Positions 12,250 to 47,621 are shown, counted from the stretch's first letter. The stretch is 64,000 nt of DNA from Mytilus californianus (GCF_021869535.1 NW_026262745.1:70742001-70806000), one strand, 5' to 3'. Notes: generated by a model not told the origin, from the sequence alone. Translations and numbers: made by a program.

Positions 12250-12600
12250 CCATCCATTCGATTGATTGATTGTTGTTTGATAAACGTCCAGCGACAAATA
12301 TTTGATGCGTGTTCAGGATGATAACAACTTTCTAATAAATACAATATGCAGGTTCTGCAATGGAGGCTGTCCAAAACGAAGGTCGGCCTCGGTGAAATTT
12401 TGATTGCCACTCGAAAATGAGGGTATATTGGATAGGGACAGAAATGTTGCCTTGCAACAAGGACACCTCTTGTAACCCTAAAAAGTTGTTACAAGGGTTC
12501 TTACGTGCAAAGAGCGCGGCAGTCTCTTTACACGAGGCATTGGACATATACATGTATCGTCCCCATTCTGAGGGGTGGACAGAGGCAAATTTAAGGAAAC
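12250..12600 (-). mobile_element. SINE-like repeat (copy B, inverted)
   Basis: The reverse complement contains gctctttgcacgtaagaacccttg...ttgttgcaaggc...tccaatataccctcattttc and the tail tcctgaacacgcatcaaatatttgtcgctggacgttt...caatcaatcaat, homologous to 5790-6150. Confidence 0.6.
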
Positions 12601-13884
12601 ATCTGAATGAGGGGGTAGGGAAGTTGGAGTGAAGGGGGAGCGGGGATATTTTGGAATTCTTTTACCGATTTTTGTCTTGGAGTTAGGGAATGCAAGTGGC
12701 AGTAGATGGGGAGTTGGATTTGGGTGATAGGGTAGAGGGAATTAGGGACACCCCTATCCAACCCCTTCGTCTAGACCGGACGAGGCTGTGTATTTGTACA
12801 TCCCGCACAGCCAAACGAAAGCTAAACTTTGGCAAGGGGTTTACTTCGGTCAGAAGAAGATCGAGAATGACTCCATATTTCTATCCATCAGTCACCCTTT
12901 CATCATTGCTAATGTCAGTTCCATTGTTAAATTCTCCGGTGTAAGTACGCATGGAAACTTTATTTTTTCAATGTCTTACTGAAATATGGCTTCTTATTCA
13001 AATTTATTGTTATAAAAGTGTACATATATGCTGACTCTAAATTCGAATTATTTACTTTATTTACTAGCACATTTCTTTTAACAGTCTTATCCATTTGCAC
13101 GAGTAATTAGGAAAACCTATTAAATAAAAATCCTAAGAATTACACTATCTACACAGTCAAAAAAAAGAAATCCCAATGGTTACCAGATTGACGGACAAAC
13201 ACTCATTATTTTTAACATTGTGAATTGAACATTGTCCTATCTCCGCAAAAACAACACTTCTTTTCATATCTTGTTAAACTATTTTTACAAATATGGCTGT
13301 GGATACTCTGAGTACAGACAAAACGAAGCATCTAGGAAAGTAATCAGGCATGGCTGGACCTACACAAATAAAAGTTATATGCATTTTACAATGTGTTTTC
13401 CTTCAGAAACAAATAAAAAAAAAAAAAAAGAAGCTCACCTGGATTTTGGTCTACAGAAGATAGCAAAATAAACATACAACTGAGTTTCATTGGATACGGT
13501 CCATGCACTCGTTTACACTTTAAATCAAATGTTGTTGTCCAGATAAAATATTCTCCCTCTATTGCCGGTAGAAACTAAACCAGTTCACATCAACAAGAAC
13601 ATGTATATGAGGGAGGCTTCTCAAACCGCCTTCCTAGAGGCGGATTATGGTGTAAAAAGGGGGCTCCTCATGGGGCTACATTATAAGATAATAAAATTAT
13701 GGTTAATGCATAAACTTTTTACATGTCACACTAGCTCCAAACGTTGTCTAGTTTTGCCTCCCCTTTCAAAATCCTGGATCCGCATCATTTAAATTCGCAA
13801 CATAGTTTATTTTGGCTATTCTACAGGCAGGTATAAAAAAATAAATGAATAGCAAAATCCAGTTGAATTTTTTCAAGGACGTAT

Positions 13885-28100: not shown

Positions 28101-28653
28101 GTATTAATCTTATCAGTGTTTGTCTGGATTATTTGATAATGACATCCTGTTCATAATTCCATCATCTATCTTATAAGTACAAATAATCAGGGGATTAGTA
28201 CAAATGTTTCAACATTTTTGTACATATTAGCCAATTTTTTTTACAAATCAGTCAGTCCCACTTGAAAATTAGCAGCAGTTGTAGACAGATAGAGGGCAAA
28301 TTTATTGTAAGTTTCAATTCCAATTTTGAAAAATTGTAAAAGTTTACGAGGTGTTTTCACCTAGCATGCTTAGAAGTCATTCTGTTACAAGTGAAAAGTT
28401 TTACAAAGGGATTGTAAATACCATTGCAAGTTTGAGCTCTATGGAGTTTCACATCATATGCATTCTACCTATTTATCATGGATAAAAAAGTCATTCAGTC
28501 ATAACATTAGAATGCCAAGTAAGTTGATAGAATTTTAAATGATAATTTTAAACTCAGTGTAATCATTGTTTAAAAGATGAATAAAATTTATTCTGAATAT
28601 AAAAATATATCTAATTCATAACTTCAAAAAATATTGTTTGTTCTTTTCAGGTA

Positions 28654-31600
28654 ATGTCTAAAAAAGTTTTAATCACTGGGAGCATCAGGATTATTAGGCC
28701 GAGCTGTATACAAGGAATTTGTGAATGAAGGATCATGGGACGTTTTGGGCCTGGCGTTCAGTAGATGTACAGGAAAATTAAGGAAATGTGACATAACTAA
28801 AGATGAGGAAGTGAAAACTGTGATGAAAGAGTTTAATGTAAGTGTTGATGACCTGCAATTTTTGGAATGATTGCTTTAAAAGTTCTAATCATAAGAATAA
28901 GAAGATGTGGTATAATGGCCAATGAGAAAACTCTCCCAAAGAGACCAAATGACACAGAAATTAACAACTATAGGTCACTGTACTGCCTTCAACAATGAAC
29001 AAAGCCCATACCGTTTAGTCAGCTATAAAAGGCCCTAAAATGACAAAATTAATGTAAAATAAATCAAACCAGAAAACTTACGGCCTAATTAAGGTACAAA
29101 ATAATAATCAGCATATACTTAATAAACTTTTTGAAAATTTGTGTTTTCATACGAATGCAAAACTTTGCAGCCATATAAATGGTATGATGTCATTTTGTCT
29201 TGTTGTTGAGTCTTTTTGTGTGCTTAGTGCAGAACTGATGTCTTTTGTCTTGATGCAAGTTGTTTATTTTGGTTTGTGCCAATCTGACAAATCAAGCCAA
29301 TCACATCTGATTTTATTTAGAGAGTTATACTGTTACACCACTGACTGAAGTAAGGAGGAAGGGGGTGGGGTTGAGCACTTATTAACATGTTTAACCCCTT
29401 CTTTGTGTGCCTGTCCCAAGATAGGAGCATGTTTGTCAGTATTTGGGGTTGGTTGCTCACAGTCTGCTATTTTTTTTTTATTGTTCTTAGCATATATATC
29501 AGGCTGTTTTTTTTTCTCTTTTGAATTGTTCCACATGTTGTAGTACCAGAGCCCTTATAGTGTACTATATATTCACATTATTTGGTCTCTGGTGGATAGT
29601 TGTCTCATTGGCAACCATATCACATCTCCTTATTTTTGTACTAATGCTGTAATATTATTATATATATACATTATTACAGCCATCAGTAGTTATACATTCT
29701 GCTGCTGAGAGGAAGCCAGATGCTGTTGAACAGAAACCAGAAGCAACACAAGAGCTGAATGTATCAGCAACCAAAGTAGTCTGTCAGAATGCAGGTATTT
29801 TTCATGTTCACATAAAACTTACTATTCCTACTGAGTCTGAAAGTAAATTGTGCATGATGCATGGATCTATTATCTGGTCTAAAAATATCAAGCATGTCGT
29901 TGTTAAAGTAATATTTAAAATTGGAGTTATCTTCCTTTGTCCAATTCATAGTATTGCATTCCAATGCTTAATACAATGTAATGCTTAATTTTTAGTTCCC
30001 ACTGCAAAATAAATGCTATCTTTACACTTCAGTGCTCATAGGCTTTTTTATATTAAAAAGTCAATAGGATATATGGAACATAATTAACATTTGTAAAAGA
30101 GACATGTATCTTGACAGCATGAGACAACTAAAACATGTGTCATCAGCAATTGCAAATGCATTATAAGAATGTTTGATAAATCCAATGCTTATGTTCTGTA
30201 TAAATTTTGTTGCTACTCTTGACACCTATTAAGTTTGGCAGTTATTTTTCATGGGCTATGTTCCTTTAATATAAGAAATTCCCTGACCAGCATTATAAAG
30301 CCTCTGTTTCATTATCCATGAATGGGTATTCTCTATCCCTTAGATACTTAGCCATAGTTTTTTAGGGTAAAAATTGCACAAATTACAATGGATAGAATCC
30401 ATAAAGTTACTAGCTGGTTAGCTATATTTTAGTAATCTTTTGAGTTTGTTTCTATCCATGTCTATATAAATTAAGGAAATGTGGTATGGTTGCCAATGAA
30501 ACAACTATCCACCCAAACCAAATGACGTAGATGTTAGCAACTATGGGTCACAGTATGGCCTTCAGCAATGAGCAAAACCAATGCTACATAGCAAGCTATA
30601 AAAGGTCCCAACACAACAAAACGTGCGACAATTCTAATAAGAAAACAAACGACCTGATTTATATACATAAACAAATAAATACACATGTGATATACACTTA
30701 CAAATGAATACCAGTGTATTACAGGCTCTTGACTTAGGACAGATACATACAGGATGTAAGCAGTATATTTATAATATATACTCAAATATAAATATAAAAA
30801 ATGATGTGTAAGTGTATTACCATACTAACATGTATCATGCTTATTTAGAAAAATAAAATTTAAATTACGCAAGTAACAAAAAGTAGTGCATGGCTTATAA
30901 AGCAATCTGTTATACCATCAAAGGGAAATAAATCATTCAATGCCTAAATTTCTTTCTAAACAGATTGATTTCATATGTATCTTTACTGAGGATTTAAATA
31001 TAGAATTAAACAATTCATACATTGTCTTCAAATATAAATTTTATGTGTACAAGGCTTAGAAACAGGTAGAAAGGGAGGCTTTGCTGAGCATTTCTATCCT
31101 GTTTTGAGCAGAAATAAAATTTATATTTCATGACAATTTATATTTATTATACATCCCCCCCTCCCCCCCCCCCCCCTCCCCCCTCCCCCGTAGCGGAAGG
31201 GGCATTATGTTTTACCCTTGTACGTCTGTACGTCCGTCCGTCCGTCCGTATGTACGTACATCCCAAAATTGGTTTCTGTTCCCTAACTTCAGTTTGCCTC
31301 AACCAAATGTTATGAAACTTATACACAGTGATCATTACTACATAACACAGATCCTGTTTGAATTTTGATAGCATCACTTTTATCGTTCTAGAGTTATCTA
31401 CCTTTACAAATGGAAAAATTGCTGAAATATTTGTTTCTGTTCTCTAACTTAAGAGTGCCTCAAACTGAATGTTATGAAACGTATACACAATGCTTATTAC
31501 CACTAAACTCAGATAAAGTAACAAATTTTGGTAGCGTCACTTTAACACTTCAGTTGTGTCCCTTTATAACGTTATATGCAAACGGGGGCATCATCTGTGT

Positions 31601-34600
31601 CCCATGGACACATTCCCCATTTATTCTTTATATACTGCATTTCCTACAACTGTTCAAAATCAAATATTTAGGGTAAAAACCATCATTTTTTTAATTTGGA
31701 GCGAATGACGTAAAAATTCCGCTTACCTGTAGTTTTAATGACGTCTTAAATAAAACACAACTGAAAGGCATTGTCAACATCATAAACAAGGTGATATACG
31801 GTCAGTGACTGTATATCACAAATGATTATACGGTCCATGCAATTTGACTGCACAAATAGCACAGCTACAGTATTTACCATTTTATCAGGTTTTCAGTTGG
31901 TAATTATTAAAAATCATTAAGTCAAATTTCTAGCGCTAGCTGATTTGGTATGGTATTTATTGATAACACATTTATTTACTTTTTTTAGCTGCTGTTGGTG
32001 CTTGGGTATTATATATCAGTACAGATTACGTGTTTGAAGGATCATCACCTCCATATGCCGAGGATGCTACCCCAAATCCACTTAACAAATATGGACAAAG
32101 TAAATTTGAAGGTGAAAAGGTCACAATGGAGGTTAGTCAAGGTAGACATCTAATTTTTCAATATTAATGTTAATATCTTATTTGAAGCTTTCATAAAATT
32201 GTGAAAGATAGCTGTTTCTTACATGGAATTGGGTTCCATCTTAATTTAAGTAGATATGAATATGATTTAAAAAAAAAAGATAGTATCAACAAAAATTGGT
32301 ATAGATTGATAATTTCAAAAATAGCTTAGAATAGTTTAAAAAGACTGTCAATTCATTTGTTTAAATTTGATTAGACTGAAGTAAAGAACCACATGTTGAA
32401 AATTGGTTTAATATTCATAAAAGAAAATCAACCAGTTGACCCTCAAAGATGGCATCCAACATATCCAAGGAAAATAAGTCCAACCACTATTTCATCATTG
32501 AAAACTATCTATAGAATTATTGCAGTAACAAATGTAAAATATTATTCTACCATACATATGTTAGTGCAATAATCCCTTTGAAATTTTTCATTGATGTAAT
32601 AGAAGTTGGAGTTATTTCCCTTGGATCAATCTTGGAAGGCCAACTGGTTGATTTTCTTAATCACTTACCAATCATAGGATTTCGCTCCTCTGTTTCAAAA
32701 AAACAAGGTGTTTAAAAGACTGTTAAAGATTGATAGAATATGAATAAGGGAACTTAAAAATTAGAAAAAAATGATAGGTCTGTGTTCTAGTTTTTGAGAT
32801 ATAATCAATAGAAAATTTGGCGGGAAATAGTTCTCTCTAGATTTTTCATACATTTAACAATGACACCTTTTTCCTTTCAAAAACTATGAAAAAATAACAA
32901 GGATTTTATAAGATTTTCAAAAATGACTTAAAACTATATACAATAAAATTCTGAAAAGAAAAGTATGGGTCAGTGGGCAAAATTTTTATTGGCACTACAT
33001 GGATAAAACTAGAGGATTCAGAATATCTGACAAAAAGTCAAAAACAAGAGTAGCGAACATCTTTAAACATGTGGTACAGCCAAGTTGGACCAATAGAAGA
33101 TCCTTAATAGATAGTAGTATTGAATAAGATGAGGCTTAAACAAATAAAAATCATTCAGGAAAAAAAAAATTTCTGAAATCTAGTAGTCAGTATATATTTG
33201 AAGTTGATTTTGATTTTATAAAAGATTGGGCGAAGGGAAGTAACTCTGACTTGTGTATCGATGGGAAATAATCAACTGTAAATTTAGAAATTATTGTGAG
33301 GTTTTTGTTAATGCGAATAATGTGACTTACAAATGTATCGCAATAATAAAAAGTCGCATTCTGATATCTGATACATATATTTGTATGCAGATTTTTTAAC
33401 ATTGCAATAATTAATCTCGCATTTTTGTCCATTTTTAATAAATCGTAGTAATAAATGCACGCAATAATTTCAGAATTTACAGTATATCATTGTGTTTTGT
33501 TTGTAGATAATTCAATATTAAGAGTGCCAATTCTGTATGGAGACATTGAGTACTTGGATGAGAGTGCTGTATCTACACTATTTCAGAAGGTCACAGACTC
33601 ATCTAAACCGTGTCCTATGTCAGATTATGAACGACGTTTTCCAACTCATTGTGATGACATAGCATATGTGATAAGACAGTTAGCAGAGAGAAGGATCACA
33701 GTAAGTTCTTGAAATTTTACATTGCGTTTAAAAATACCATTAAATGTTTCTTATGTAATAATACATCTGCAGCTTTTTTACCAAAAAATATTTAAATTAA
33801 ATTGACCAAGTTGTCCGGAAATCATGGAAGTGTTCAGTATTTTCTTGTAAAAAAGAGGCTAAAGATACCAAAGGGACATTCATAAGTCGAAAACTAACTA
33901 ACAAAGCCATGGCTAAAAAAGAAAAAAAGACCACCAAAAAAACAAACACAAAACACAACATAGAAAACTAAAGACTGAGCAACACGAACCCCACCAAAAG
34001 CTAGGGGTGTTCTCAGGTACTCCAGAACAGATCCTGCTCCACATTTGGCACCTGTTGTGTTACACGTGTAAATACAAACCAGCTGTTGATTGTAAGATTC
34101 TTCATGAAAACAGTTCCTGGAATAGTTAATCAATTATTTACAAAAGCAACTCTGTCCATCTTACTTTCAAATTAAATTTGCAATGTAAATTATAAATACA
34201 GTGTACCTGGCTGCAAATTTCACAGGACTTTATATTATGGTTTCAGTATATCTTTTGATGAAGTCAAGCATATTCACTTTATTGTCGCCTCTGATGTTTT
34301 ATAAATTCTAAGTAATTTATTAAATAAAGGTATAAGATTATTTAGGTCATCAAAACAAGTATTTTTGTGCTTGTTTAATCATTTGATTTGTATACCGACT
34401 AATACTTGAATGTGATTTGTCGGTTAGAATGAGTTCCTTGGTTTAGACTTTGATAGAGCATGTTGCTGGATCTACTCCTGTAACCAATGTAGAAACTATG
34501 ATGATGTCACTCTGTTATATACAGTATATGTATGATAATAAATTTGAAATTGGCAGAAAATATGAAAAAAATGTTTAGTTGAGAATTTTAAAGATAAAAC

Positions 34601-37600
34601 ACACTTTTTGTAGAGGTTTATTCAGTTTGCAAAATGGTTTGTGAGTTAATGGGCCAAGGTAACACATCAACAACCTCTAGAAAAAATGTGTTTAATCCTA
34701 CAGAAGTTTTTGATTGCGAAGTGATGGTTTTAATGCAGTACAGACTGCTTTTATTGAAGAATTATAGTGCTTTTATGCTCTGGAAAAGATAGATAGTTTA
34801 TCACAGGCGCTTTAGGATTTTATTGTATTCTAGCAATAATCTTAAGGATTTAAAAAAAAGTTTTTATTACAATGTAATAAAAGAAAGGGCCATTCATATA
34901 TATTTTTTTTAATCGTGAAGATATTTGCTAGAATAAGTGAAAGAGGGAAAATAAGTTGAAATACTCAAGAATTTTACTTTAAATGAATTTAAAAAAGGGG
35001 AGGGGAGGGGTTCATTCCCCAAACACCTGTGAATAAATTAATGGTTGTTTCAGTTGCAATGGTATAGCTTTATTAGTTTCCTAACAAAATATTTTACAAA
35101 TATTTGATATCCTCCAAATAGTTTTTTTTTTACTGAATTCAGTGGTTTTACTGAGATTTTTACTTGAAATTGAAGTGAGATATCAGTGTTTGATCAGTTA
35201 ATCATGTTAATAGTCATATTCCATAGCTAAATGAGTTGAACATTTTTTATCTGTGTCATTGCAGTGTTCTTTCCAGGGGTTATAGTGTCATGGTTCCATA
35301 TTGGTGTTATATCTTTAACCATGGTGATATCTTAAGGTTGCAATTCTGTAAATATAGACAATGCAATTTCCCATAGGAACTCCTTTTTCAGCTAAAACTG
35401 TGCCACTTTTACTGTGAAGTTTCGTAAAAAATTATATCCCAGAACGGAAAGTTTATATGCACTACTTTTTTATTCAAAGGTCATGAAGGTCAAAATATAG
35501 GGCTGTGCGGCATATTTTCAACATTGATATGCCCTGAACTTCTAACAGTTTAAACTTATACTAAAATTCTATACTACCCCTACCTCCATTTTTGGACGCC
35601 TAAGAATTAAATTTTAGGCGCTACCATGTTTTTCTATACTGGTAACATTCCCAAGTTATGTCTCTATGAGATGAAACACAGAGATCATATCTGGGAACCA
35701 GTACGTTAACAAATTAACATATCTATAAATATTATATATCTCCCCAAAAGAGGCGTGGCTTGTGAAACAGCTGTATTTACAAAGTGCCACCTAAAGAGAT
35801 TTGATAGTAGAATGTAGTATGCATGTGATGCTTTAAATTAAGGGAGCCATCATTGTGTTATTTGAAAATACTTGTGAAAAAAGTGAAAGTTTTTGTATGA
35901 AAACAATATCTAATATTATTACACATTGAATTATAAGTGCCACTATCAGAGTTTAGGGGGAAAATATGAAGATAGCAAATGGGAAGTCAAAATCATAAGT
36001 GGCTATGGATGATTGGAACCTATCAAGCTATTACAGTTAACGGTGCCAAGCTGCAGCTTTTAAAATTGTCAGCTGGAGGTGGTAAATAAAGGCAACAGTA
36101 GTATAATACTGTTCGAAATTCATAAATCGATTGAGAAAAAAACAAATCCGGGTTACAAACTAAAGCTCAACTGTGATAGTGACGCTGACACTTTGAAAAG
36201 CTGCAGCTTGCCACCTCCAGCTGTGATAGTGATACTGACACTTTGAAAAGATGCAGCTTTCCACCTCAGGTTATGATAGCGACACAGACACTTTAAAACT
36301 ATTAGTACCAGTATCATATTGAAGGTGGAGGGCTGTACATCCTATCAATATTATAACAGTTTTGGTGAACTGCTGCCTTTTTGTGTGGCAGTGTCACTAT
36401 CACAGCTGTAGGTGCCAAGCTGCAGCTTTTTAAAGTGTCTGTGTAGCTATCATAACCTGAGTTGGGAAGCTGCATCTTTTCAAAGTGTCAGTATCACTAT
36501 CACAGCTGGAGGTGGCAAGCTGCAGCTTTTCAAAGTGTCAGTGTCACTATCACAGTTGGATCATCTGAGGTGGTAAGCTGCAGCTTCTTCAAAATGTCAG
36601 AGTCACTATCACAGCTGGAGGGGGCAAGCTGCAACTTTTCAAAGTGTCAGCGTCACTTTAATAGTTGGAGCTTATTAGGTGGCAAGCTGCAGCTTTTAAA
36701 AGTATCAATTCCACTATCACAGCTGAAGGTGACAAGCTGCAGCTTTTTAAAGTGTCAGTGTCACTATCACAGCTGAATGTGACAAGCTGCAGCTTTTTTA
36801 AGTATCAATGTCACTATCCCAGTAGGAGGTGGGAAGCTGTAGCTTTTTAAAGTGTCAGTGTCACTTTCACAGCTGGAGGTGACAAGCTGCAGCTTTTCAA
36901 AGTATCAGTGTCACTTTAACAGTTGGAGGTGGGAAGCTATAGCTTTTCAAAGTGTCAGTGTCACTTTCAAAGCTGGCGGTGGGAAGCTGTAGCTTTTCCA
37001 AGTATCAGTGTCACTATCACATTTGGAGGTGGGAAACTGTAGCTTTTCAAAGTATCAGTACCACTATCACAGTTAGAGGTGGTAAGCTGCAGCTTTTTGA
37101 AGTGTCAGTATCACGATCACAGATTGGGGTGGAAGGATGTACACTATCAAAATTTTAATGCAACAATCATGATTTGAGAGGGTTACCTTATCAAACTGTT
37201 ACTCCAGATTCACGGCTGGAGGTGGAGGGCTTTTCTCTAAGTTCTGAGGACTAAAATCAATTAAACTATTAGTACCAGCATCACAAATTTAGTCAGATGA
37301 CTATTTCATGTCACAATATTAATTTCACTACAAAAGATGGAGATAAAGGACTGTATACTATCAAACTGTTTGTATCACTATGCCCGTTGGAGGCAAAGAG
37401 CTGTACTCTATTAGTGCCACAATCAAAGACGGATACTGAGGACTGCAATATATATAAGTATCATAATTGAAGGTAGAGGGCTGTACTTTAAGAGCCGCAA
37501 TTATTCATTGGAATTGAGGGCCGTATCTACCATATCAAACTATTAGTACCAGTATCATATTGAAGGTGGAGGGCTGTATTATTTTAATTTGTTAGTTCAC

Positions 37601-40600
37601 CAATCACAATTTGAGGTTGAGGGCTGTACATCCTATCAAAATATAAGTACCTCTATGACAATTGAGCCTCCTCATAGGGTTTTTGATTATGTGATTACTT
37701 GGCCGTTTTTATAGTGATTATTTGATTACCAGACCAAATATTTCATGATTATTTGATTATTTGATAATCCAGGACTGTATTTTTGATTATTTGATTATCT
37801 GTTTAAAAAAGTGATTAATGACTATGTGATTATATTGGCAAAAAAATTGTGATTATGTGATTACTTGGACACCCTCATGAGGGGCCTCACAAATGGAGAT
37901 TGAACACTGCATTCTGTCACACTACTATAGTGCACACATCACAGTTGGTATCAAACTATCAGTGCCAAAATCAAAGTTTGAAAATGAGGACTGTACTCTA
38001 TTCGAGCCTCTTTGAATCTGTCAAAATACAGTCATGGTTTGGGAAACATCAATGGACTGAATAGCACACTGGAAAAGGGAGCACTTTCTCAGGAGCAGGA
38101 ATTCATAGGACTTATGAAGCAAAAAACGTTTATTTTAGAATCAGAAGTGTGAACTCAAAATACAAGATGTAGATTTTGAAAACTGTATGAAGTTGGTAGA
38201 TGACTTGTTGAGTGAAAAACATCAGGTAATATTTGAATTTAAAGTTAATTTAAATACATTGTACTTGTAAAGAATGTATTAATTTTGCATAATGAATGAA
38301 TTACTTTAAGAAAGAGCTAATACTTTATTGTTAAATGTTAAATATAAATATGAAATATATCAGAAATAATGTATATTATGGGGTGCATTGCATTTGCACC
38401 AATTTTTACAAAATTCAATCAAACATTTGCGCTGCAAGGTTACATTTCATTTAAGCCAAATATAAAAACTACATTTGCGCCATTTTACAAGTTACATATA
38501 AAGGAAAAGTTAAAATATGCATTGCTATATCGTGAATAAGATTTTTTTCAGAGTATTCCCCCTGGGTAACTTCGTGAGTTCATACTCATTTCTAATATAA
38601 AACAGAGAGTCACTTAGGTTTAAATTTATATAGTGTTCATATGTTTGAGGTGTCAAGATGGACATTGTTAATTCTGAGACAAACAGACCATTTGCTCAAT
38701 TGAATTGTTCCATATTTTTCATTTTGCTTACGAGTATTTTGTCAGAACAAACTTTTGGTTTTACTCCAGTGTTCCTGTATAGTGCTTTCTTTAAAGATTT
38801 ATGATCACGTTTATTTATAACAGAACTGTGTTTTAACATTATATAATATGAAAAATCTCTTTTCAATAACGTATCAGTGTATAGAGCTTTCATTATGGTT
38901 ATGATGACTGGTTTCAGATTAATAGTTTTATTATGCTATCAAACTGTGTGTTAAAGTTATTATAAAAAGTCTCTTTTGAATTAAACATTTTTTTATACTA
39001 TTTACCTGTATCATAGGTGCAAATGAAATTTTTTATGTTTAGTGCAAATGAAATATGGTTTGTGGCGCAAATGAAAGAATTTTTTGGTGCAAATGAAATG
39101 CCAATTGGAGCAAAAACAAAGCACTAATATAATGCATCATATGATTTTTTTTGTATTTGATAAAAAAACTGTAAACTAAAGCAATTCAACACACAGTTAT
39201 TTTTTTACAATGTTTACACTGAACAATGTTTTAGCAGAAAAAAGTGATCAGATATTAACATTTTCATTTTTGTTTTGTTTATTTTGTATATTATTTTGTT
39301 AGCAATGGTTAGTTACACATTTTGTTGTATATTTTAGAGTTATATGTGGCCATTCTACCAACCAGTGGACCCAATAGCCTTAGGCCTCTATGATTACTTT
39401 GAGATAGTCAAGAAACCAATGGATCTCAGTGCAATAAAGGTGAGAGTAATAAACAAAAACAAGTGCTTTAATATGAACATATATGAGAGAAATAAAGTGT
39501 TATGGTGTAACACCACTAATTTGGGCCCATTCAGGAAGCACATACCAGAAAGTAGTACATATTTAACACAAAATAGTTCCTAGGGATGGGTGTAACTTTC
39601 AAAATATGTAGAATATTTAGGTAATTTTGGTATCAAATGAAAGCAGAATGACTGGTGATCATTGTAGAACACTTTTTGACTAAAAATTTTGAATAATAAA
39701 AAAAATGCATGACATTTTAAAAAGAGGGTACATTTTACCTGTTTGTCAGATCTGAAGTACCTGTTTTGGTACATCCTAAGTTCTGGGAACCAGTTCTTTC
39801 TTATATGCCGTTAAAGGTATGTTGATTTTTTTCAGTAAAAGACACCATAAAAAGTTGCTTTGACATGCAATGATTGTCACTTTATTTGAAATTAAAACAA
39901 AAGAGCTGTGCCTGCTTGAAATAGAGGAATTTAACATAGAAAGCAATGGTGCCATGAATTAGTGGTGTACTTCCTTATGAGACTTTGTACAACATATTCC
40001 ATTTTAAACTAAAACATGAAATTTACTGACATATTTGATTTTGTTAACAGGTTATGTGTACTAAAAAATCATAAATAGCTATTGTAAAAATAGAAACAAA
40101 CTGGCCATAAGATGTTAATAAGTCATAATTGTGTTACCCTTACCCTGGTTAGCTTATGGTAATATACTTATTACTGTTTCAATAATATTAAACAAGGATA
40201 TTAATTTCATGGTCAAGCTGACAATCAAACTAACTTAGCTTTGATAGTTGTGTACTTTTAGATACTCTGGATTTCAGAATGCATATCTCTTTTTAATTGA
40301 ATTATTTTGTTTTTCTCATTTTTTGATTTTTGAGACCCAATATTGATATTAAGGCAAATTAAGAGTGTCTTGTGGTGTATTTTTTTTTTATAATTTACCC
40401 GACTTGGTGGTCTCTTGGTAGTGTGCCTACCTTGAGTGTTGGAGGATGTTGGTTGATCCCAAGCCGGGTCAAACCAAAGACTTGAAAATTGGTAATTGCC
40501 GGTTCTCTGCCAAACACTCAGCATTAGGCAGTAAAGGCAAAGACAGGTTAGTTTCATTTCAAAATAATCTGCACTGGAAAAGGTGACATGTCTCCTTGTG

Positions 40601-43600
40601 GACTGTAACCTTGTGAACAACCACGTTGAAAATTCAGCTCATCTTGTAAACCAAGTACAAAGCAGGGTTAATATTTAAATCACATTAACATGTTCCGGTC
40701 CTGAATATGCATTTAATTTGCCACTGGACGTTAAAAAGCCATCATCATCCTTTTTATACGACTGAAAAAAAATTTTGCGGTCGTATATTGGTATGACGTT
40801 GGCGTCGTCGTCGTCGTCCGAAGACTCATTGGTTTCCGCACATATAACTTTAGTTTAAGTGAATGGATTTCTATGAAATTTTACCATAAGGTTCAATACC
40901 ACAAAAGGAAGGTTGGGATTGATTTTGGGGGTTATGGTACCAACAGTTAAGGAATTAGGGGCCAAAAAGAAGCATTTTTCTAGTTTCCAGACAATCACTT
41001 GTGGATGGTGTATGGATCTCTCTGAAATTATACCACAAGTTTCCATACCACAAAGGGATGGTTAGGATGTCCTTTGGGGGGTTATGGCTCAAACCGTTTA
41101 GAAATTAGGGGCAAAAAAGGGGGAAAACAAAGGTGTCCTGGTTAATGGACAAAAACTTTAGTACAAAACAATAATTTAAAGCAGTGTAAGGGAGGTAAAT
41201 CAAATACATCATTTGAATTACCCCCCTTACACTTCTTTTAAATTATGTATAAAGTAATGATTAATGAACTATTAAGACAATTTAAAAGCAGTGTAAGGGA
41301 GGTAAACCAGATACGTTTTGATTACCTCCCTTGCAATGCTTTTGAATTATGTTTAAAGAAATGCATATTTAGAAAGGAAGGCCAGTAAAAATATCTGCAA
41401 ATGTTGCATCTATTTTTTTTTTACAAAAAATCCATATGAAAGATTTATTAGGGGGGTAAAAAGAAATTGTGGGGGGGTCATTTTTTTCTCATTTCAGATT
41501 TCAGAAATTAAATTCTTCAAATATAATTGTTTCCAAAAAAAAGGGGGGGGGGGGGGGGGGGGGGTTAATACGCAACAGCATAGTGTATTGCACAAAAGCA
41601 AAAAAAAAAGAGGGGGGTAATTTTTTTATTTTTTTTGTGGGGGGAGGGGGGATCAATTCGCAACAGCAAAGTGTATTGCATAAATATAAATTCAAATCAT
41701 ATAACCAATTCTAAGTTCTTTGACTACAGTTATTCTGTTTCAGAAACCTTTTATATGTCAAATATTTAATTACAATCCAAATTCAGACCTGTATCAAGCG
41801 CGAATATTGCGTCCATTTTTGCCCCAACTGTTCAGGGTTGGACCTCTTAGGTCGTATCCAGCTGCGCTCGGCAAAGCAATTTATTTATCATTAATTATTT
41901 GACCATGTTTTTTTTCAGAATAATTTAGAATGTTGTCTATACAAATCAGTAGATGAATTTAGTGGTGACATGCAACAGCTCTACCAAAACTGCTTTCTAT
42001 ACAGTGAACCAGATACTGAGATTTATAGGATGGCAAAACAGTTAGAAGAATACTTTGAGAAGGCAATGGAAACAACCAAAAGTGATGAACCAGTGGGAAT
42101 GGATTCACCTGCTGAAAATTCTTCTTCAGGAAAGGAAATGGCTTCAGCAATGGAAAATTTACAACTGGAGGTGAATTACGATTCACAGTGGCGTTGTTTT
42201 TCGCACAGTTTTGATTAAGTGTTATTATATTTAAATAAATGTTTACACCGATTTATTCTTGGTGTTTTGACTGGTTCACAAAGTAATATACACTACAGCT
42301 GAAAAAGATTTTTGCTTTTTATTCCTGTACACAGGGGAACAGGTTGCAAAAACTGGTTGTCAAAACTTCCAATTCCTGCATACTTTCGCATTGACAATTT
42401 TGATACAAGCTTTTGTACTAACATTTCTATAAATTTAGATGAAAGGTACCAATTTGAGTGGACATTGATTGTCTGACCACTATAGACAGGTGGAATATGC
42501 AAAATTCTTGTGAGCTGTATTGGGGAAATTTTGTAGAAAGCAGGCCTCTACAATAACTTTTTTTCCAACTTGTCCAGTAGGACAAGTACATACCAAAACT
42601 TACTTGTCCGAATGAAATTGTAACTTGTCCAACAAAAATCTTAATAATAACCTTTTTTGCATTTTAAGATGATTCAAGGAACAAAATGAATTAAAACAAT
42701 AGAACAGAATTTGATTTATATCTTTTGAAATACCTTTTAAAAATATGAGTCAGAACAACTGAATCTAGTAATGTCACAAGACTTAAGTTCTAGTTTTCAT
42801 CAATGCCAAAGTCTCATTAGACTCTACACATGAGGCACCGTCTGATAGGCCTGTCAATATCCACTCATTGGATTTGTATCCTGGTTTTTTAATTTGAAAA
42901 AAGTTTATTCAAATTCAATCAATAAAAAAAAAAAGAAGATGAGGTATGATTGCCAATGAGAGTACTCTCTGCAAGAGACCAAATGACACAGAAATTAATA
43001 ACTATAGGTCACTGTATTGCAAGTATTGTTTTTTCTTCTATATATGATCAAATATGATTTGGGAATTTTATGGTAAATAATTTCTTCATTTTTATTTAAA
43101 AAATATTTTGTTAAAAAAAAATAGGGTATGGTATTTATTATAAAGCAACAGAATAAGGTAGGAAAACGAGGTTACTGATTTGTCTTGGTCCCGAAATGTC
43201 TCCTGTCTCCTGCGTTGCCAGAATGTCTATTAATCATGTTTATTAAATATGTCTCCTAGGTGCCAAACTGTCTATTAAAATTGGAGCCGAATCGTTTTGG
43301 AGCTGGTGACGAACTGTTTTGTAAAGTTACCTTCCTTATCTACAAAGAGCATCGCTGATTCGGATCAGTAAGACTGGTTTCCGAGAATAGTATGCCTTTT
43401 ACCTGTTTAAAAGTACCTGACAAAGAACCAGTTTTAAATTATCGATTGCAAGTAAACATGTCAAATTAATACTTGTGTTTATCTTCTTTTCTTGTTTTTT
43501 GTTTATAATTACTTTGTTCATCAAAGTTGGATTAAATTTATTTTCTGCTTAATAATTTAACTTGTCCCGTCGGACAAGCTTGATATAGCTTTTACTTGTC

Positions 43601-46600
43601 CGACCTTTTTAGGCAGTTAAGCTGCCTTATGCGAGCACCCTAGATTTGTGTTCTACCCAATAAATGCTGAAATACATGCCATTGTTATTATCTAGCTGGC
43701 TATTATGTTATTTATAACTAATTGTACATTTTTTTAATACTTTTATTTCTGGAATACAAAAAATATGACCAGAAAAACCTTAAATGATCGTCGAACTACC
43801 CAAAACTTTTGAAGTTGCACATAGGAAGTAGTGCTCAATAGAAATCCGTACGTAGTTTATTATCCCCTGTGCTTTTGGCTACGATGTCAAAGAACAATTG
43901 TATGAAATATTTCATCGCGGAAAATCTATATTTACAAGTCGTTTATATTTCCCAAATGGCAAAATGCGCAGGAATATTGTTCATGTACAACAAATCTCTA
44001 TGATAGAGGAAATAAAGTTATATAAGTGGGTGGTAATTTCTAACTTATCTTGCCAAATAAGGTTGTTGTTATTTTATGAATGAAACGAGGTCATGAAAAC
44101 AGATGTGGAAATCGACGTTGATGGGATGTTTTAAGTAATGTGGACAACTCGTCCCCGAGACAAGTCGGACCGAATCCACTCAAACCGTCTAAGAAGACAA
44201 CTTTGACCGTTTGTCAGATTTACTTAGGGTTTCATAAAATATTAGACTAACATGTCTAGCGGAGCCATTTATCTTTTGTTTGTGCATTGGGGTCTATTTA
44301 GGGGTATTTGGAGGGGCCTGAAGAAGGGAGGGGTTTACTATAGAACCCTATGGGATTTTATTTTTTTAAATTTTCAAATGACTATTTCTCGAAAACAGTA
44401 GGTGATAGACACATGCAGTCTTCAGTAATGAGAACAGGACAATACAAAAAATCAACCAAAATATAGGGTGAGTCCCTGGGGGTCATCCCAACCCCCTTTA
44501 ATTTGAAAATGTACTTTTATCTTGTAAACCATCGCGATCCCCACCCCTAAACAATATACATACTTGAATGGGACAATTAAAAAAATCAAATGAAAATAAT
44601 TTGGGGGAGTCCCCAGTGTCGTCCCACCCCCTCCTGTTTGAGAACTTGGAAATGGTCAAGATCCCCACCCCTAAACCATATATATTCATGTATGGGACAA
44701 TAAAACAAATCAAAAATGAAATATAGAGTGAGTCCCTGGGGTCACCCCATCCCCTCCTGTTTGAGAACTTGTAAACAGTCGAGATCCCCACCCCTAAACC
44801 ATATATATTCATGTATGGGACAATATAACAAATCAAATGAAATATATGGGGAGTCCCTGGGGTCACCCCAACCCCTCCTGTTTGAGAACTTGGAAATGGT
44901 TGAGATCCCCACCCCTAAACCATATATATTCATGTATGGGACAATAAAACAAATCAAATGAAATATAGGGGGAGTCCATGGGGACACCCCACCCCCTCTT
45001 GTTTGAGAACTTGTAAACAGTCAAGATCCCCACCCCTAAACCATATATATTCATGTATGGGACAATATAACAAATCAAATGAAATATTTGGGGTCCCTGG
45101 GGTCACCCCACCCCCTCCTGTTTGAGAACTGGGAAATTGTCGAGATCCCCACCCCTAAACCATATGTATTCATGTATGGGACAATATAACAAATCAAATG
45201 AAATATAGGGTTGAGTCCCTGGGGTCACCCCACCCCCTCCTGTTTGAGAACTTGTAAACGGTCGAGATCCCCACCCCTAAACCATATACATTCATGTATG
45301 GGACAATAAAACAAATCAAATGAAATATAGGGGGAGTCCCTAGGGACACTCCCGCCCCTCCTGTTTGAGAACTTGTAAACAGTCAAGATCCCCACCCCTA
45401 AACCATATATATTCATGTATAGGACAATATAACAAATCAAATGAAATGTATGGGGAGTTCCTCGGGTAACCCCACCCCCTCCTGTTTGAGAACTTGGAAA
45501 TGGTCGAGATCCCCACCCCTAAACCATATATATATTCATGTATGGGACAATAAAACAAATCAAATGAAATATAGGGGGAGTCCATGGGGACACCCCACCC
45601 CCTCTTGTTTGAGAACTTGTAAACAGTCAAGATCCCCACCCCTAAACCATATATATTCATGTATGGGACAATATAACAAATCAAATGAAATATTTGGGGA
45701 GTCCCTGGGGTCACCCCACCCCCTCCTGTTTTAGAACTTGGAAATTGTCGAGATCCCCACCCCTAAACCATATGTATTCATGTATGGGACAATATAACAA
45801 ATCAAATGAAATATAGGGGAGTCCCTGGGGTCACCCCACCCCCTCCTGTTTGAGAACTTGTAAACGGTCGAGATACCCACACCTAAACCATATTTATTCC
45901 TGTTCATCATTTCAAAAAGATTTGAATGACATACAGGGTCAATCTCCTTGGTGTCACATATGCATATCACTTTACCAAACCAAACCAATATGAACTGGAC
46001 TTTGCCCAATGTCAGGAGACCATGGGAATGACGATTATGGGGGCTTTGTTTGGGAGACTTCGTAACGGCATCCTGTTACAATTATTTCTTGTTTATTATA
46101 AAAAAATTTTGATCCAAAAAATGAGTCTAGATTATTGAAGTTACTTTAATTGTTTATTAAATTATTTCTGAGCCTATAATAATTTTCATTTATAACTCAT
46201 TTTAAAGAAAACATATAAATCTTTCAAGCAGTGTAAAGCCCGAGAATGTTTGACCAACTGTTTTATAATCACCTGTCATTTTATCCAAACTTGGTATGGA
46301 GTAACATCATGCACTTGGGGTTGAAGATGGGGGTCATTTACATTGATATATGAGTTGCTTTTGAAAACCTTGATGAAATTTTAATTAATTTGCCTTAATA
46401 ATCAATTCATTTAATGAACATAAATGTACAATATACGAATGATTAATGTTTGTTCTTTCAAATCTTAAAAGAAAATTGAAGCAACATTGCCACAGTTTTC
46501 ATAATTACGTTTGCCTTGGTTTTTGGTTAATTGCCTACAGCGCTTACAGTGCTTTGATTTTCCTCTGGTACCGGACAATCGGACAAGCGTTATTGTCGAG

Positions 46601-47621
46601 CCCTGGAAAGACATAACACTGCATCAATTATGGGTATTTTTCTAAATGTTAGATAATAATTACACTGTACTTTAAATTAAGGTATTTTCCATGTAAGAGT
46701 ATTTTCCTTAATTAATATTAATTTTATTTTTTTCATTCAAATCCCGAAGAGTGAATGATAAAAGAGTCATCCTATTGTCTTTCAATTTAAAATTTGCTAT
46801 TTTCTAAGCATTTCCGTTCAGTATTAATAAGAAGATGTGGTATGAGTGCCAATGAGACAACTCTCCATCCAAGTCACAATGTATAAAAAGTTAACAATTT
46901 TAGGTCTTCAAGTTCTTTATGGTTTCAATACTCTCAAATGTTTTTTTTTTTTTTTGGTTGACATAAGTCAGGAGCATATCACTAACAAAGGTTATACCAG
47001 ACACATATGTCATGCGAGATGAACTCATGTTGTCAAGTTATATATAATTAGGGCCTGTTATATATAGCTTACTCTATTGTATATGTTTACTCATTGTTGA
47101 GAGCAATACAATGATTTTTAGTTAGGGAACATAAATTCATTTAATTTGGACTCTGGTGGATAATTGTTTTGTTGGCAATCATACCACATATATATCTAAT
47201 ATGTTCATATCAGTAATAACTTTTACCATGTTTACACTTGAAACATTCTTGTTTACTTCTACATATCGTAATTAAAAAACGTTATAAACCAATCCAAAAT
47301 GGAACTGTAATTAAAATAATATCTGATACTTTTAATTTGTTTTAATATTTGATTTTTTCTTCACAGGATAACAGTATAAAAGGAGTATACCATTGGAGTG
47401 GTGATGAAAATATGACTAAATATGACATGGCTTTAGTAATGGCAGAAGTGTTCAGTCTTCCTTCAGATCATATTCAACCAGACAAAAAGCCTTCACCTGG
47501 AGCCTCTAGACCATTTAATTCTCAGCTTAGTTGTCAGAGACTGAACGACCTAGGAATAGCAAAAAATAGCCAGTTTAAAAGCAAGATTCTTAATGTATTG
47601 AAGCCATATTACAAGACATGA
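28654..47621 (+). CDS. MAT2B: Methionine adenosyltransferase 2 subunit beta (RmlD-like SDR fold); exons 28654-28837, 29680-29794, 31989-32141, 33507-33700, 47367-47621; +1 frameshift at 28678-80
   Basis: Motifs [69 protein letters not shown] and [14 protein letters not shown]. All introns are GT-AG and phase-consistent once one extra G is removed from exon 1 (~299 aa). Confidence 0.93.
31150..31625 (+). mobile_element. HINE-like non-autonomous element
   Basis: C-rich head, (gtcc)n microsatellite at ~31230 and 3' end gggggcatcatctgtgtcccatggacacatt with a gtgtcc/ggacac hairpin. Confidence 0.55.
33275..33484. mobile_element. MITE with TIR ACTGTAAATTYAGAAATTATTG (Tc1/mariner-like)
   Basis: Terminal inverted repeats actgtaaatttagaaattattg / caataatttcagaatttacagt; second copy at 47638-47833. 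Confidence 0.75.
35335..35792. mobile_element. MITE with TIR AGGTTGCAxTxTGTAAATA
   Basis: Inverted termini; an oppositely oriented homologous copy lies at 54743-55192. Confidence 0.7.
36400..37130. repeat. 50-bp minisatellite (~14 copies), decaying into related repeats to ~37980
   Basis: Unit gctgcagcttttcaaagtgtcagtgtcactatcacagctggaggtggcaa, with period 50 at 36421/36471/36521. Confidence 0.9.
37664..37888. mobile_element. ~220-bp MITE, TIR GAG(G/C)CyCCTCAT, 6-bp TSD
   Basis: Ends gagcctcctcat...atgaggggcctc with flanks acaatt/acaaat. The sister copy at 48728-48943 has a perfect ATGTAT TSD. Confidence 0.75.
38139..42170 (+). CDS. BET-like bromodomain encoded by three exons (38139-38225, 39338-39439, 41919-42170) inside MAT2B intron 4
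   Basis: Joined translation: [29 protein letters not shown]|[34 protein letters not shown]|[50 protein letters not shown]...LQLE. It has WPF and PMDL motifs, and all junctions are GT-AG phase 0. Confidence 0.88.
40390..40748 (+). mobile_element. tRNA-derived SINE (Meta-SINE-like), near full length
   Basis: tRNA-like head with gttgatcccaagccgggtcaaaccaaagac, central aaaattggtaattgccggttctctgccaaacactcagcatta, and tail tcctgaatatgcat...ttgccactggacgttaaa followed by (cat)n. Confidence 0.65.
40750..41885 (+). mobile_element. HINE-like non-autonomous element
   Basis: Head tttttatacgac...gtcgtata, (cgt)n microsatellite, G-rich interior, and 3' end ggtcgtatccagctgcgctcggcaaagca. Confidence 0.6.
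42541..46605. mobile_element. Non-autonomous TIR element with 5-bp TSD (hAT5-like), carrying a nested satellite-bearing element
   Basis: TIR CAGGCCTCTACAATAAC (42541) / GTTATTGTCGAGCCCTG (ends 46605); GAAAG on both flanks (42536-40, 46606-10); subterminal ACTTGTCC/GGACAAG repeats. Confidence 0.75.
44525..45890. repeat. ~121-bp tandem satellite array (~11 copies)
   Basis: Unit gagatccccacccctaaaccatatatattcatgtatgggacaatataacaaatcaaatgaaatataggggagtccctggggtcaccccaccccctcctgtttgagaacttgtaaacggtc. Confidence 0.95.

What the first reader, a model, noticed from the sequence alone, without database searches (positions are those of the whole stretch)
33701..47366. Bromodomain exons inside MAT2B intron 4 can splice in frame into MAT2B
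Seen: MAT2B exon 4 ends in phase 0 (ATC ACA|GTAAGT) and exon 5 starts in phase 0 (cag|GAT). Between them on the same strand lie three exons of 87, 102 and 252 nt, all phase 0-0. They encode a complete bromodomain plus linker and end GAG|GTGAAT. Inclusion would insert 147 aa between RQLAERRIT and DNSIKG with no frameshift. Established: MAT2B regulates MAT2A, and the complex supplies SAM locally on chromatin. Inference: a MAT2B-bromodomain isoform would couple a histone-mark reader to SAM synthesis. The alternative is a same-strand nested bromodomain gene whose start I could not locate.
Basis: partly seen in the sequence, partly recalled or inferred. Interest (0 to 1): 0.85.

Follow-up and report, generated by a model that had tools for sequence, protein, structure and literature searches.

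The report
Optional bromodomain cassette inside mussel MAT2B
Three intact exons in the last intron of a mussel MAT2B gene (the regulator of the enzyme that makes the methyl donor SAM) encode a bromodomain copied from a BET chromatin-reader gene; they fit MAT2B's reading frame and have been kept by selection across Mytilus species, but they were skipped in the RNA examined here.

Summary
Exons 38139-38225, 39338-39439 and 41919-42170 (+ strand) are AG/GT-bounded and phase 0-0. They encode a complete BET-BD2-like bromodomain between two MAT2B exons, and inclusion adds 147 aa in frame. The cassette lies in the same intron in M. californianus, M. galloprovincialis, M. edulis and M. coruscus. Its two internal introns match those of a bivalve BET gene, so it began as a DNA-level copy of three BET exons. 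The bromodomain core shows dN/dS 0.10-0.30, against about 1 for flanking intron read as codons. NCBI RefSeq models for M. galloprovincialis (450, 447 and 421 aa) contain this insertion. M. californianus models join exon 4 to A to B. Among the 120 best MAT2B homologues, only Mytilus entries carry a bromodomain.

Three results weaken the case. One RNA-seq run gave about 16-22x depth on MAT2B exon 4 and zero on exons A and B. Four of six sampled sequences carry a disabling lesion. The acetyl-lysine-anchoring Asn is Ser or Thr in every copy.

Best reading: a genus-specific, selected, rarely or conditionally included cassette. It is auto-annotated in RefSeq, and my paper search found no description. 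The link from chromatin reading to SAM synthesis is inference. The window's MAT2B exon 1 carries an apparent 1-nt frameshift.

The parts
28651..28837 (+). MAT2B first coding exon (ATG at 28654). It carries an extra G at 28678-28680 (GGG against GG in M. californianus and M. galloprovincialis) that shifts the frame between MSKKVLITG and ASGLLGR.
29680..29794 (+). MAT2B coding exon 2 (phase 0 to 1)
31989..32141 (+). MAT2B coding exon 3 (phase 1 to 1, donor CAAG|GTAGAC)
33507..33700 (+). MAT2B coding exon 4. It ends ...RQLAERRIT in phase 0 with donor GTAAGT. Depth was about 16-22x in RNA run X8.
36166..37122 (.). 50-bp satellite array in the intron. It is conserved at this place in other Mytilus species and is translated by mistake in ab initio gene models P0002, P0003 and P0060.
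38139..38225 (+). Cassette exon A (87 nt, phase 0-0): N-terminal linker plus the start of helix alphaZ. TAG lies directly upstream in frame, and there is an in-frame ATG at 38187.
39338..39439 (+). Cassette exon B (102 nt, phase 0-0): WPF shelf and ZA loop. It has the same length and boundaries as the middle BD2 exon of a bivalve BET gene.
41919..42170 (+). Cassette exon C (252 nt, phase 0-0): helices alphaA, alphaB and alphaC, with Ser in place of the acetyl-lysine-anchoring Asn, then a C-terminal linker of about 34 aa. Donor GAG|GTGAAT.
42171..42239 (+). Read-through tail if the exon C donor is not used (16 codons, stop at 42216-42218), followed by AATAAA at 42234. This is a possible alternative 3' end and was not tested with reads.
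47367..47621 (+). MAT2B last coding exon (DNSIKG...KPYYKT, stop at 47619-47621). It encodes the C-terminal part of the protein. In human MAT2B the extreme C-terminal tail is what binds MAT2A.

Best explanation
The three exons form an optional in-frame cassette of the MAT2B gene that is specific to the mussel genus Mytilus.

Origin (shown by comparison): three consecutive exons encoding the second bromodomain of a BET gene were copied as DNA, introns included, into the last intron of MAT2B in an ancestor of the sampled Mytilus species.

Use (inferred from gene models and selection, not seen in reads here): splicing exon 4 > A > B > C > last exon inserts 147 aa. The insert is a short linker, a four-helix bromodomain, and a disordered linker of about 35 aa. 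It sits in a surface loop between a helix and a strand of the MAT2B Rossmann-like fold. Both halves of MAT2B stay intact, including the last coding exon, which in human MAT2B supplies the C-terminal tail that docks into MAT2A.

The bromodomain core has been kept by purifying selection about as strong as that on MAT2B itself, so it has been translated in this frame. The canonical skipped isoform dominates in the RNA examined, so inclusion must be rare, tissue-restricted or stage-restricted.

Likely function (inference): the isoform tethers MAT2B, and through it the SAM synthetase MAT2A, to acylated lysines on chromatin or other proteins. Because the anchoring Asn is Ser or Thr in all copies, the domain is an atypical reader whose ligand is unknown.
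For: - Exon anatomy and domains.
- Same cassette, same boundaries, between the same MAT2B exons in M. californianus, M. galloprovincialis and M. coruscus. In M. edulis and a second M. coruscus contig it lies upstream of the MAT2B last exon.
- Intron positions match the Potamilus BET gene (KKHS|AYAWPF and GTIK|EKMEV, middle exon 102 nt).
- RefSeq products of 450, 447 and 421 aa (M. galloprovincialis) and 304 and 301 aa (M. californianus) contain the junctions. No separate gene is called at either locus.
- dN/dS: whole cassette 0.21-0.55. Bromodomain core 0.10-0.30 (binomial p from 7e-5 to 0.03). MAT2B 0.10-0.47, with interspecies comparisons mostly 0.10-0.17..
- Control: flanking intron read as codons gives 0.66-1.5, with 16-19% divergence against cassette dN of 0.05-0.07.
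- Third codon positions vary most (31/23/43 variable columns).
- AlphaFold2 model of the M. galloprovincialis cassette: residues 11-110 have pLDDT mostly above 90. Foldseek top hits are BRD2/BRD4/BRDT BD2, rmsd 0.8 A over 102 columns.
- Full-length model keeps MAT2B at pLDDT above 90 on both sides of the insert.
- MAT-beta binds MAT-alpha2 through its C-terminal tail: PMC4107924.
- A Thr-for-Asn bromodomain (PHIP BD2) still reads H4K12ac: PMC8653789.
Against: - RNA run X8 (about 1.55 Gb read, 6% of the run): depth 0 on exons A and B on both strands, against 14-22 reads on exon 4. About 50 reads would be expected at full inclusion, so inclusion there is below roughly 6%.
- No joint 33700>38139 or 38225>39338 was listed in any run. 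The 985-nt transcript contig of X2 runs from exon 4 into 310 letters that lie outside the stretch, which fits a direct join to the last exon.
- No transcript-derived (Logan) protein with the cassette turned up in the length ranges searched.
- Four of six sampled sequences carry a disabling change. M. californianus: exon B donor GT>GA and a -1 in exon C. M. edulis: -1 in exon C. M. coruscus contig 1: TAG as the last codon of exon A and a +1 near the end of C. M. coruscus contig 2: exon B acceptor AG>AA and a +2.
- RefSeq models are computed. They could rest on alignments of the earlier ab initio Mytilus proteins rather than on RNA, and I could not see their evidence lines.
- The Asn that anchors acetyl-lysine is absent.
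- The window's own MAT2B exon 1 is frame-shifted.
Confidence: 0.55

Rival explanations
1. The cassette once worked but is now being lost. In the window's lineage it is effectively silent. The intact frame here is what remains of past selection, and the RefSeq isoforms are annotation products or splicing noise.
For: Zero RNA depth on exons A and B in X8 and no cassette junction listed in any run. Independent lesions in four of six sequences, at least three of them substitutions that cannot be homopolymer errors: GT>GA donor, TAG, and AG>AA acceptor. dN/dS is higher in close pairs (0.36-0.44) than in deep pairs (0.21-0.23). Linker dN/dS is 0.3-0.6 or more.
Against: Core dN/dS remains 0.20 between the window and the closely related M. 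californianus sequence (p 0.002), and 0.10 between M. galloprovincialis and a lesion-bearing M. coruscus copy. Cassette dN is 3-4 times lower than the divergence of adjacent intron. Two high-quality sequences are fully intact. Several lesions are 1-nt indels in A or G runs in older long-read assemblies and may be errors.
Confidence: 0.27
2. The cassette serves mainly as an alternative 3' end. MAT2B exons 1-4 splice to A (B, C) and the transcript ends in the intron. The product is the N-terminal two-thirds of MAT2B fused to part or all of the bromodomain, without the MAT2A-binding tail.
For: The M. californianus RefSeq products (304 and 301 aa) are of this form: exon 4 > A > B, then read-through of the mutated donor to a stop. 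In the window, exon C read past its donor ends after 16 codons, with AATAAA at 42234.
Against: The M. galloprovincialis models all continue into the last exon. The exon C donor GT is kept in all six sequences, and in-frame indels (+3, +3, -6) occur as well as frameshifts. A protein lacking about 84 C-terminal residues of the fold is unlikely to be stable, and removal of the C-terminal tail abolishes MAT2A binding in human MAT-beta.
Confidence: 0.1
3. An independent bromodomain gene nested on the same strand, with its own promoter in the intron and translation starting at the ATG in exon A (38187).
For: There is an in-frame ATG at 38187, conserved in five of six sequences. Ab initio models in M. 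edulis and the older M. galloprovincialis assembly (P0060, P0153) treat the exons as a separate gene.
Against: Exon A begins at a conserved acceptor with TAG directly upstream in frame, so it needs an upstream exon. No conserved coding block lies between exon 4 and exon A; only TEs and a satellite do. Starting at 38187 would remove the N-terminal linker and the first residues of helix alphaZ. RefSeq calls only one gene at the locus in two species. No RNA coverage was seen upstream of or on exon A. The ab initio models that separate it translate satellite DNA or run into the next gene.
Confidence: 0.06

Closest known systems
Second bromodomain (BD2) of BET proteins (BRD2/BRD3/BRD4/BRDT, Drosophila fs(1)h)
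   Same: These are the best sequence and fold matches: 41-49% identity, Foldseek rmsd 0.8 A over 102 columns. WPF shelf, PVD, the ZA-loop length and the conserved Tyr residues are kept. The two internal intron positions and the 102-nt middle exon match those of a bivalve BET gene.
   Different: It is a single domain with no BD1, no ET domain and no C-terminal motif. It is embedded in a metabolic regulator. The acetyl-lysine-anchoring Asn, at least 90% conserved in the 50 BET-like relatives aligned, is Ser or Thr. BD2-typical His is Thr.
MAT2B (MAT-beta), regulatory subunit of methionine adenosyltransferase II; PDB 2YDX, 4NDN
   Same: The host gene is a clear orthologue (E 2e-96 to human MAT2B, RmlD_sub_bind), with GxxGxxG and a last coding exon that aligns with the C-terminal part of human MAT2B. 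The canonical Mytilus product is about 300 aa, as in other molluscs.
   Different: None of the non-Mytilus entries among the 120 best-scoring MAT2B homologues (of 2381 hits from molluscs to vertebrates) carries a bromodomain. The insertion falls at human RQLAEKRML|DPSIKG.
Atypical (non-Asn) bromodomains, e.g. PHIP/BRWD BD2 (Thr) and TRIM28 (Thr)
   Same: A small hydroxyl residue replaces the anchoring Asn. PHIP BD2 shows that such a domain can still read acetyl-lysine (H4K12ac), using an extra water (PMC5977933; PMC8653789).
   Different: They belong to different bromodomain subfamilies, and Ser is not among the replacements listed for human bromodomains (Tyr, Thr, Asp). [quoted passage not shown]
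Lineage-specific exon shuffling or exonisation that creates an optional domain-insertion isoform
   Same: Symmetric phase 0-0 exons were copied into a phase-0 intron, so every combination stays in frame. Models with and without exon A exist.
   Different: The result joins a chromatin-reader fold to a subunit of the SAM-synthesising enzyme. My paper search found no description of this pairing.

Membership tests
Bromodomain (Pfam PF00439) | Profile match above the curated cut-off | tested here: met
   Exon C alone scores 32.9 bits against a cut-off of 21.7. Exon B covers profile 16-43 and exon C covers 45-83. PF00439 is precomputed on the orthologous products.
Bromodomain (Pfam PF00439) | Left-handed four-helix bundle with ZA and BC loops | tested here: met
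   In the AlphaFold2 model of the M. galloprovincialis cassette, residues 11-110 have pLDDT mostly above 90 and the helices are in canonical order. Foldseek gives rmsd 0.8 A to BRD2 BD2. The model is of the orthologue, which is 86% identical to the window's product.
Bromodomain (Pfam PF00439) | Conserved Asn at the start of the BC loop that hydrogen-bonds acetyl-lysine | tested here: not met
   Ser in the window (LYSEPD), and Ser or Thr in all cassette copies, against Asn in at least 90% of 50 BET-like relatives. It therefore belongs with the 'atypical' bromodomains; ligand binding was not tested.
BET family | Two tandem bromodomains plus an ET domain | tested here: not met
   There is only one bromodomain. 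No further BET-like coding block was found in 33701-47366 on either strand. The cassette derives from a BET gene but is not a BET protein.
BET family | BD2-type sequence and gene structure | tested here: met
   Best PDB and database matches are BD2 of BRD2/3/4/T and fs(1)h. Intron positions are shared with the Potamilus BET gene.
MAT2B / RmlD_sub_bind (host gene) | Profile and orthology to MAT2B | tested here: met
   PF04321 matches the flanking exons. The Mytilus orthologue matches human MAT2B structures at E 2e-96. All five coding exons were found.
MAT2B / RmlD_sub_bind (host gene) | Intact reading frame from the start codon | tested here: not met
   The window has GGG where M. californianus and M. 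galloprovincialis have GG (28678-28680), which shifts the frame after MSKKVLITG. Whether this is an assembly error or a null allele was not resolved.
MAT2B / RmlD_sub_bind (host gene) | C-terminal tail that docks into the MAT2A dimer | not testable with these tools
   The last exon is present and is retained in the cassette isoform. Its role is known from human MAT-beta (PMC4107924), but the mussel tail differs in sequence.
Alternatively spliced cassette exons | Canonical splice sites, and lengths that keep the frame | tested here: met
   AG/GT at all six boundaries. Lengths are 87, 102 and 252 nt, and both flanking introns are phase 0.
Alternatively spliced cassette exons | Junction-spanning RNA reads for inclusion | tested here: not met
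   No 33700>38139 or 38225>39338 joint was listed, and depth on A and B was zero in X8, X1 and X2.
Alternatively spliced cassette exons | Purifying selection on the encoded protein | tested here: met
   Core dN/dS is 0.10-0.30, against 0.66-1.5 for adjacent intron read as codons.

The most novel reading that the evidence does not exclude
Mytilus makes, in particular tissues or stages, a MAT2B isoform with a built-in atypical bromodomain that places the MAT2A/MAT2B SAM synthetase on acylated chromatin. This would be a natural 'Rosetta-stone' fusion showing that local SAM synthesis on chromatin is a selected function.
Probability: 0.3. Interest if true: 0.8.

Novelty: new variant of a known kind. 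Interest (0 to 1): 0.6.

Why it matters
Work in mammals holds that the MAT2A/MAT2B enzyme is brought to chromatin by partner proteins, so that SAM is made where histone and DNA methyltransferases use it. That recruitment is indirect and hard to test. A selected gene fusion that places a chromatin-reader fold inside MAT2B would be independent evolutionary evidence for the link. It would also offer a simple system: compare one isoform with the domain and one without. The case is also a clean, datable example of domain gain by DNA-level exon copying, with symmetric phase 0-0 exons landing in a phase-0 intron. Finally, it is a caution for annotation: three earlier Mytilus gene models at this locus translate satellite DNA or merge neighbouring genes.

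Tried and rejected
- Homologue search with exon C alone was blank. The tool's length window (46-147 aa) hid the longer relatives. The exhaustive representative search then found them.
- The look-up of encoding contigs for the 447-aa product found nothing, because only the longest product of a gene is stored. The 450-aa product worked.
- Alignment A1, which mixed MAT2B proteins with bromodomain fragments, was misaligned and was discarded. I used separate alignments A2 and A3 instead, so in the full-length model the bromodomain itself has low confidence.
- A scan of metagenome contigs for more distant cassette relatives found none.
- Words search of earlier findings for 'bromodomain': nothing. 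The two notes near this place concern a Harbinger transposon and do not bear on this finding.
- X1 and X2 hold 0.54 and 0.32 of the sampled words of exon C plus its tail. I first read this as expression and then rejected it, because the same runs also hold low-depth contigs of unique intron, so they contain pre-mRNA or DNA traces.
- A high-copy transposon cargo was considered and rejected. Exons A and B are single-copy or less in the DNA run of organism B, while neighbouring intron bins reach depths in the thousands. No 16-mer of the exons recurs in the window.
- A retrocopy origin was rejected because the introns are retained at BET positions.
- The single read-laying run could cover only 33480-39470.
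Full report
**1. Observation**

- MAT2B's fourth coding exon (33507-33700) ends ATC ACA|GTAAGT in phase 0.
- The last exon begins cag|GAT at 47367 in phase 0.
- Between them, on the same strand, lie exon A (38139-38225, 87 nt), exon B (39338-39439, 102 nt) and exon C (41919-42170, 252 nt).
- Each of the three has an AG acceptor and a GT donor, is open throughout, and is a multiple of three long. Together they give 147 aa.

Pfam places exon B on Bromodomain profile positions 16-43 and exon C on positions 45-83. The flanking exons fall on RmlD_sub_bind 145-201 and 205-285. PDB searches align B and C with BD2 of BRD4 and BRD2. Those alignments also show that the Asn which anchors acetyl-lysine (KYNPPD in BET proteins) is Ser here (LYSEPD).

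**2. Rest of the intron**

The rest of the intron holds transposon fragments, a 50-bp satellite (36166-37122) and a 121-bp tandem array (44521-45903). No further BET-like coding block occurs on either strand. A TAG sits in frame directly upstream of exon A, so exon A needs an upstream exon. The only internal start is the ATG at 38187. If the exon C donor is not used, the frame closes after 16 codons, and AATAAA follows at 42234.

**3. Relatives**

An exhaustive profile-free search with exon C found close relatives only in Mytilus, plus one 713-nt metagenome scaffold. Every other hit was 42% identical or less. Three older ab initio models contain the exons: M. coruscus CAC5403523.1 and CAC5412068.1, and M. 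edulis CAG2246155.1. All three also translate the intronic satellite, so they are partly artefacts.

A second search found NCBI RefSeq products for M. galloprovincialis:
- XP_076071389.1 (450 aa) and XP_076071391.1 (447 aa) read exons 1-4, A, B, C, last exon.
- XP_076071392.1 (421 aa) is the same without exon A.

M. californianus XP_052078081.1 and XP_052078083.1 (304 and 301 aa) read exons 1-4, A, B and then run on into the intron. RefSeq calls only one gene at the locus in both species.

Among the 120 best of 2381 MAT2B homologues, only Mytilus entries carry PF00439. The set includes scallops, oysters, a pearl oyster, an ark shell, Dreissena, gastropods, cephalopods and vertebrates. My paper search found no description of such a fusion.

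**4. Synteny and state of the exons**

I fetched five loci and aligned them to the window. The window is 93-96% identical to M. californianus up to about 39504 and only 77-87% identical beyond that.

| Sequence | Exon A | Exon B | Exon C |
|---|---|---|---|
| Window | intact | intact | intact |
| M. galloprovincialis | intact | intact | intact |
| M. californianus | intact | donor GT>GA | -1 |
| M. edulis | -6, in frame | intact | -1 (and a +3 insertion) |
| M. coruscus contig 1 | last codon TAG | intact | +1 near the end |
| M. coruscus contig 2 | intact | acceptor AG>AA, +2 | intact |

The M. californianus donor change explains why its RefSeq products read through after exon B. Some of the 1-nt indels lie in short homopolymers in older long-read assemblies and may be errors. 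The three substitutions cannot be. In the M. edulis contig and the second M. coruscus contig, MAT2B exons 1-4 were not found in the 10 kb fetched upstream.

**5. Selection**

I used Nei-Gojobori counts.
- The whole cassette gives dN/dS 0.21-0.55. For window against M. galloprovincialis there are 20 synonymous and 22 non-synonymous changes, with binomial p 1e-5 against neutrality.
- The 101-codon bromodomain core gives 0.10-0.30 in all eight pairs tested.
- MAT2B gives 0.10-0.47, and interspecies comparisons are mostly 0.10-0.17.
- The linkers give about 0.3-0.6 or more.

As a control I read the adjacent conserved intron blocks as codons in all three frames. They gave 0.66-1.5 against M. galloprovincialis and M. 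coruscus, with 16-19% nucleotide divergence. Cassette dN is 0.05-0.07. Variable columns by codon position are 31/23/43 in the cassette and 20/13/48 in MAT2B. The domain has therefore been translated in this frame and constrained over the divergence of these species (dS about 0.2-0.3).

**6. Origin**

The nearest non-cassette relatives are BET proteins, at 41-49% identity. In the BET gene of the bivalve Potamilus, BD2 is split at the same two places: KKHS|AYAWPF and GTIK|EKMEV. Its middle exon is exactly 102 nt. The cassette is therefore a DNA-level copy of three consecutive BET exons, not a retrocopy.

The metagenome scaffold L007 carries an exon-C-like exon with the same acceptor, a GTAAGA donor, phase 0-0 and Ser again at the Asn position. 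This hints at an origin older than the sampled species, but its source organism is unknown.

**7. Structure**

With 55 aligned sequences, AlphaFold2 folds the M. galloprovincialis cassette as a canonical bromodomain. pLDDT is above 90 over most of residues 11-110, and both tails are disordered. Foldseek's best matches are BRD2, BRD4 and BRDT BD2, at 0.8 A over 102 columns.

In the full-length model, MAT2B is confident (pLDDT above 90) on both sides of the insert. The insert lies between a helix that starts at residue 202 and strand 372-375. This corresponds to human RQLAEKRML|DPSIKG. The bromodomain itself has low confidence in that model because the alignment held no bromodomain relatives.

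Human MAT-beta binds MAT-alpha2 through its C-terminal tail, and deleting 15 residues abolishes the complex (PMC4107924). The full cassette isoform keeps the last coding exon, which aligns with the C-terminal part of human MAT2B. The truncated M. californianus products lack it.

**8. RNA**

I could lay reads only once, on at most 6000 letters. I chose 33480-39470, which covers exon 4, exon A and exon B.
- In the stranded RNA run X8 (same organism label, about 1.55 Gb sampled), exon 4 has 14-22 reads. Their direction fits a plus-strand mRNA.
- Exons A and B have zero depth on both strands.
- No joint into exon A, or from A to B, is listed for any run.
- A 985-nt contig in X2 holds exon 4 at its positions 479-675. 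The 478 letters before exon 4 fit exons 1-3. The 310 letters after it lie outside the stretch, which fits a direct join to the last exon.

At full inclusion about 50 reads would be expected on A and B, so inclusion in that sample is below roughly 6%.

Limits: this is one sample of unknown tissue, and only 6% of the run was read. The loose ends at 33700 were not among the rows shown. X1 and X2 hold part of exon C's words, but they also hold low-depth contigs of unique intron, so that is not proof of mature mRNA.

**9. Reading**

The anatomy, the shared intron positions, the genus-wide synteny, the selection on the bromodomain core and the RefSeq models together favour a real, optional MAT2B cassette. 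A chance arrangement or a separate nested gene is less likely. The negative RNA result and the lesions in four of six sequences show that inclusion is at most minor in ordinary tissue, and that the isoform is dispensable in some haplotypes.

The proposed function is inference only: tethering the SAM synthetase to acylated chromatin. The Ser or Thr at the anchor position leaves ligand binding open. PHIP BD2, with Thr at that position, reads H4K12ac (PMC8653789). [quoted passage not shown] Thirteen of 61 human bromodomains lack the Asn (PMC5977933).

**10. Verdict**

The cassette is a new variant of a known kind: domain gain by exon copying. It is already present as automatic RefSeq isoforms in a congener, but my paper search found no description. 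I put my confidence in the functional-cassette reading at about 0.55, and interest at 0.6.

Noticed in passing
window 28654-28700: MAT2B's first coding exon has GGG at 28678-28680 where M. californianus and M. galloprovincialis have GG. The ATG frame (MSKKVLITG) runs out of register with the Rossmann motif (ASGLLGR...), which continues in the +1 frame behind a TAA. This is either a homopolymer error in the assembly or a null allele of MAT2B.
   Followed up: partly
window 36166-37122; L001 about 11880-12670; L003 about 9520-10330: A 50-bp satellite array is conserved in the same MAT2B intron in other Mytilus species. It has long open frames (150-nt periodicity) and is translated in three deposited gene models (CAC5403523.1, CAC5412068.1 named 'BRD4', CAG2246155.1). 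Those proteins are partly artefacts.
   Followed up: partly
window 25245-48200 against L005: Similarity to the M. californianus reference is mosaic: 93-96% up to about 39504, then 77-87% across exon C, the rest of the intron and the last exon. This suggests a very divergent haplotype or a recombinant or introgressed segment. The two M. coruscus contigs differ from each other just as much (dS 0.2-0.3).
   Followed up: no
window 44521-45903: A 121-bp tandem array (11.4 copies, 88% matches) lies in the intron between exon C and the last MAT2B exon. It has long open frames on both strands.
   Followed up: no
window 33880-34079, 35280-35879, 36080-36279, 37680-37879, 38680-38879: These intron segments have very high depth in both DNA and RNA runs (thousands-fold in DNA contigs, 30-90 reads in RNA). 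They are high-copy, transcribed transposon fragments. RNA depth over this intron therefore cannot be read as MAT2B pre-mRNA.
   Followed up: no
L007 (ENA metagenome scaffold, 713 nt): An exon-C-like bromodomain exon (49% identical, same acceptor, GTAAGA donor, phase 0-0, Ser at the Asn position) occurs in an environmental metagenome assembly. It probably comes from animal DNA in the sample; the source organism is unknown.
   Followed up: partly
L002 (M. edulis GCA_905397895.1 contig): Here the cassette and the MAT2B last exon lie downstream of a minus-strand fibrinogen-C gene, and MAT2B exons 1-4 are not found in the 10 kb upstream. This could be a partial duplicate, a much larger intron or a misassembly. 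The newer M. edulis RefSeq product (302 aa) is canonical.
   Followed up: no
P0153 (M. galloprovincialis VDH92696.1): This older gene model starts at the ATG in exon A, reads B and part of C, and then continues into an unrelated protein with a PF14920 match. It appears to merge the cassette with another gene.
   Followed up: no
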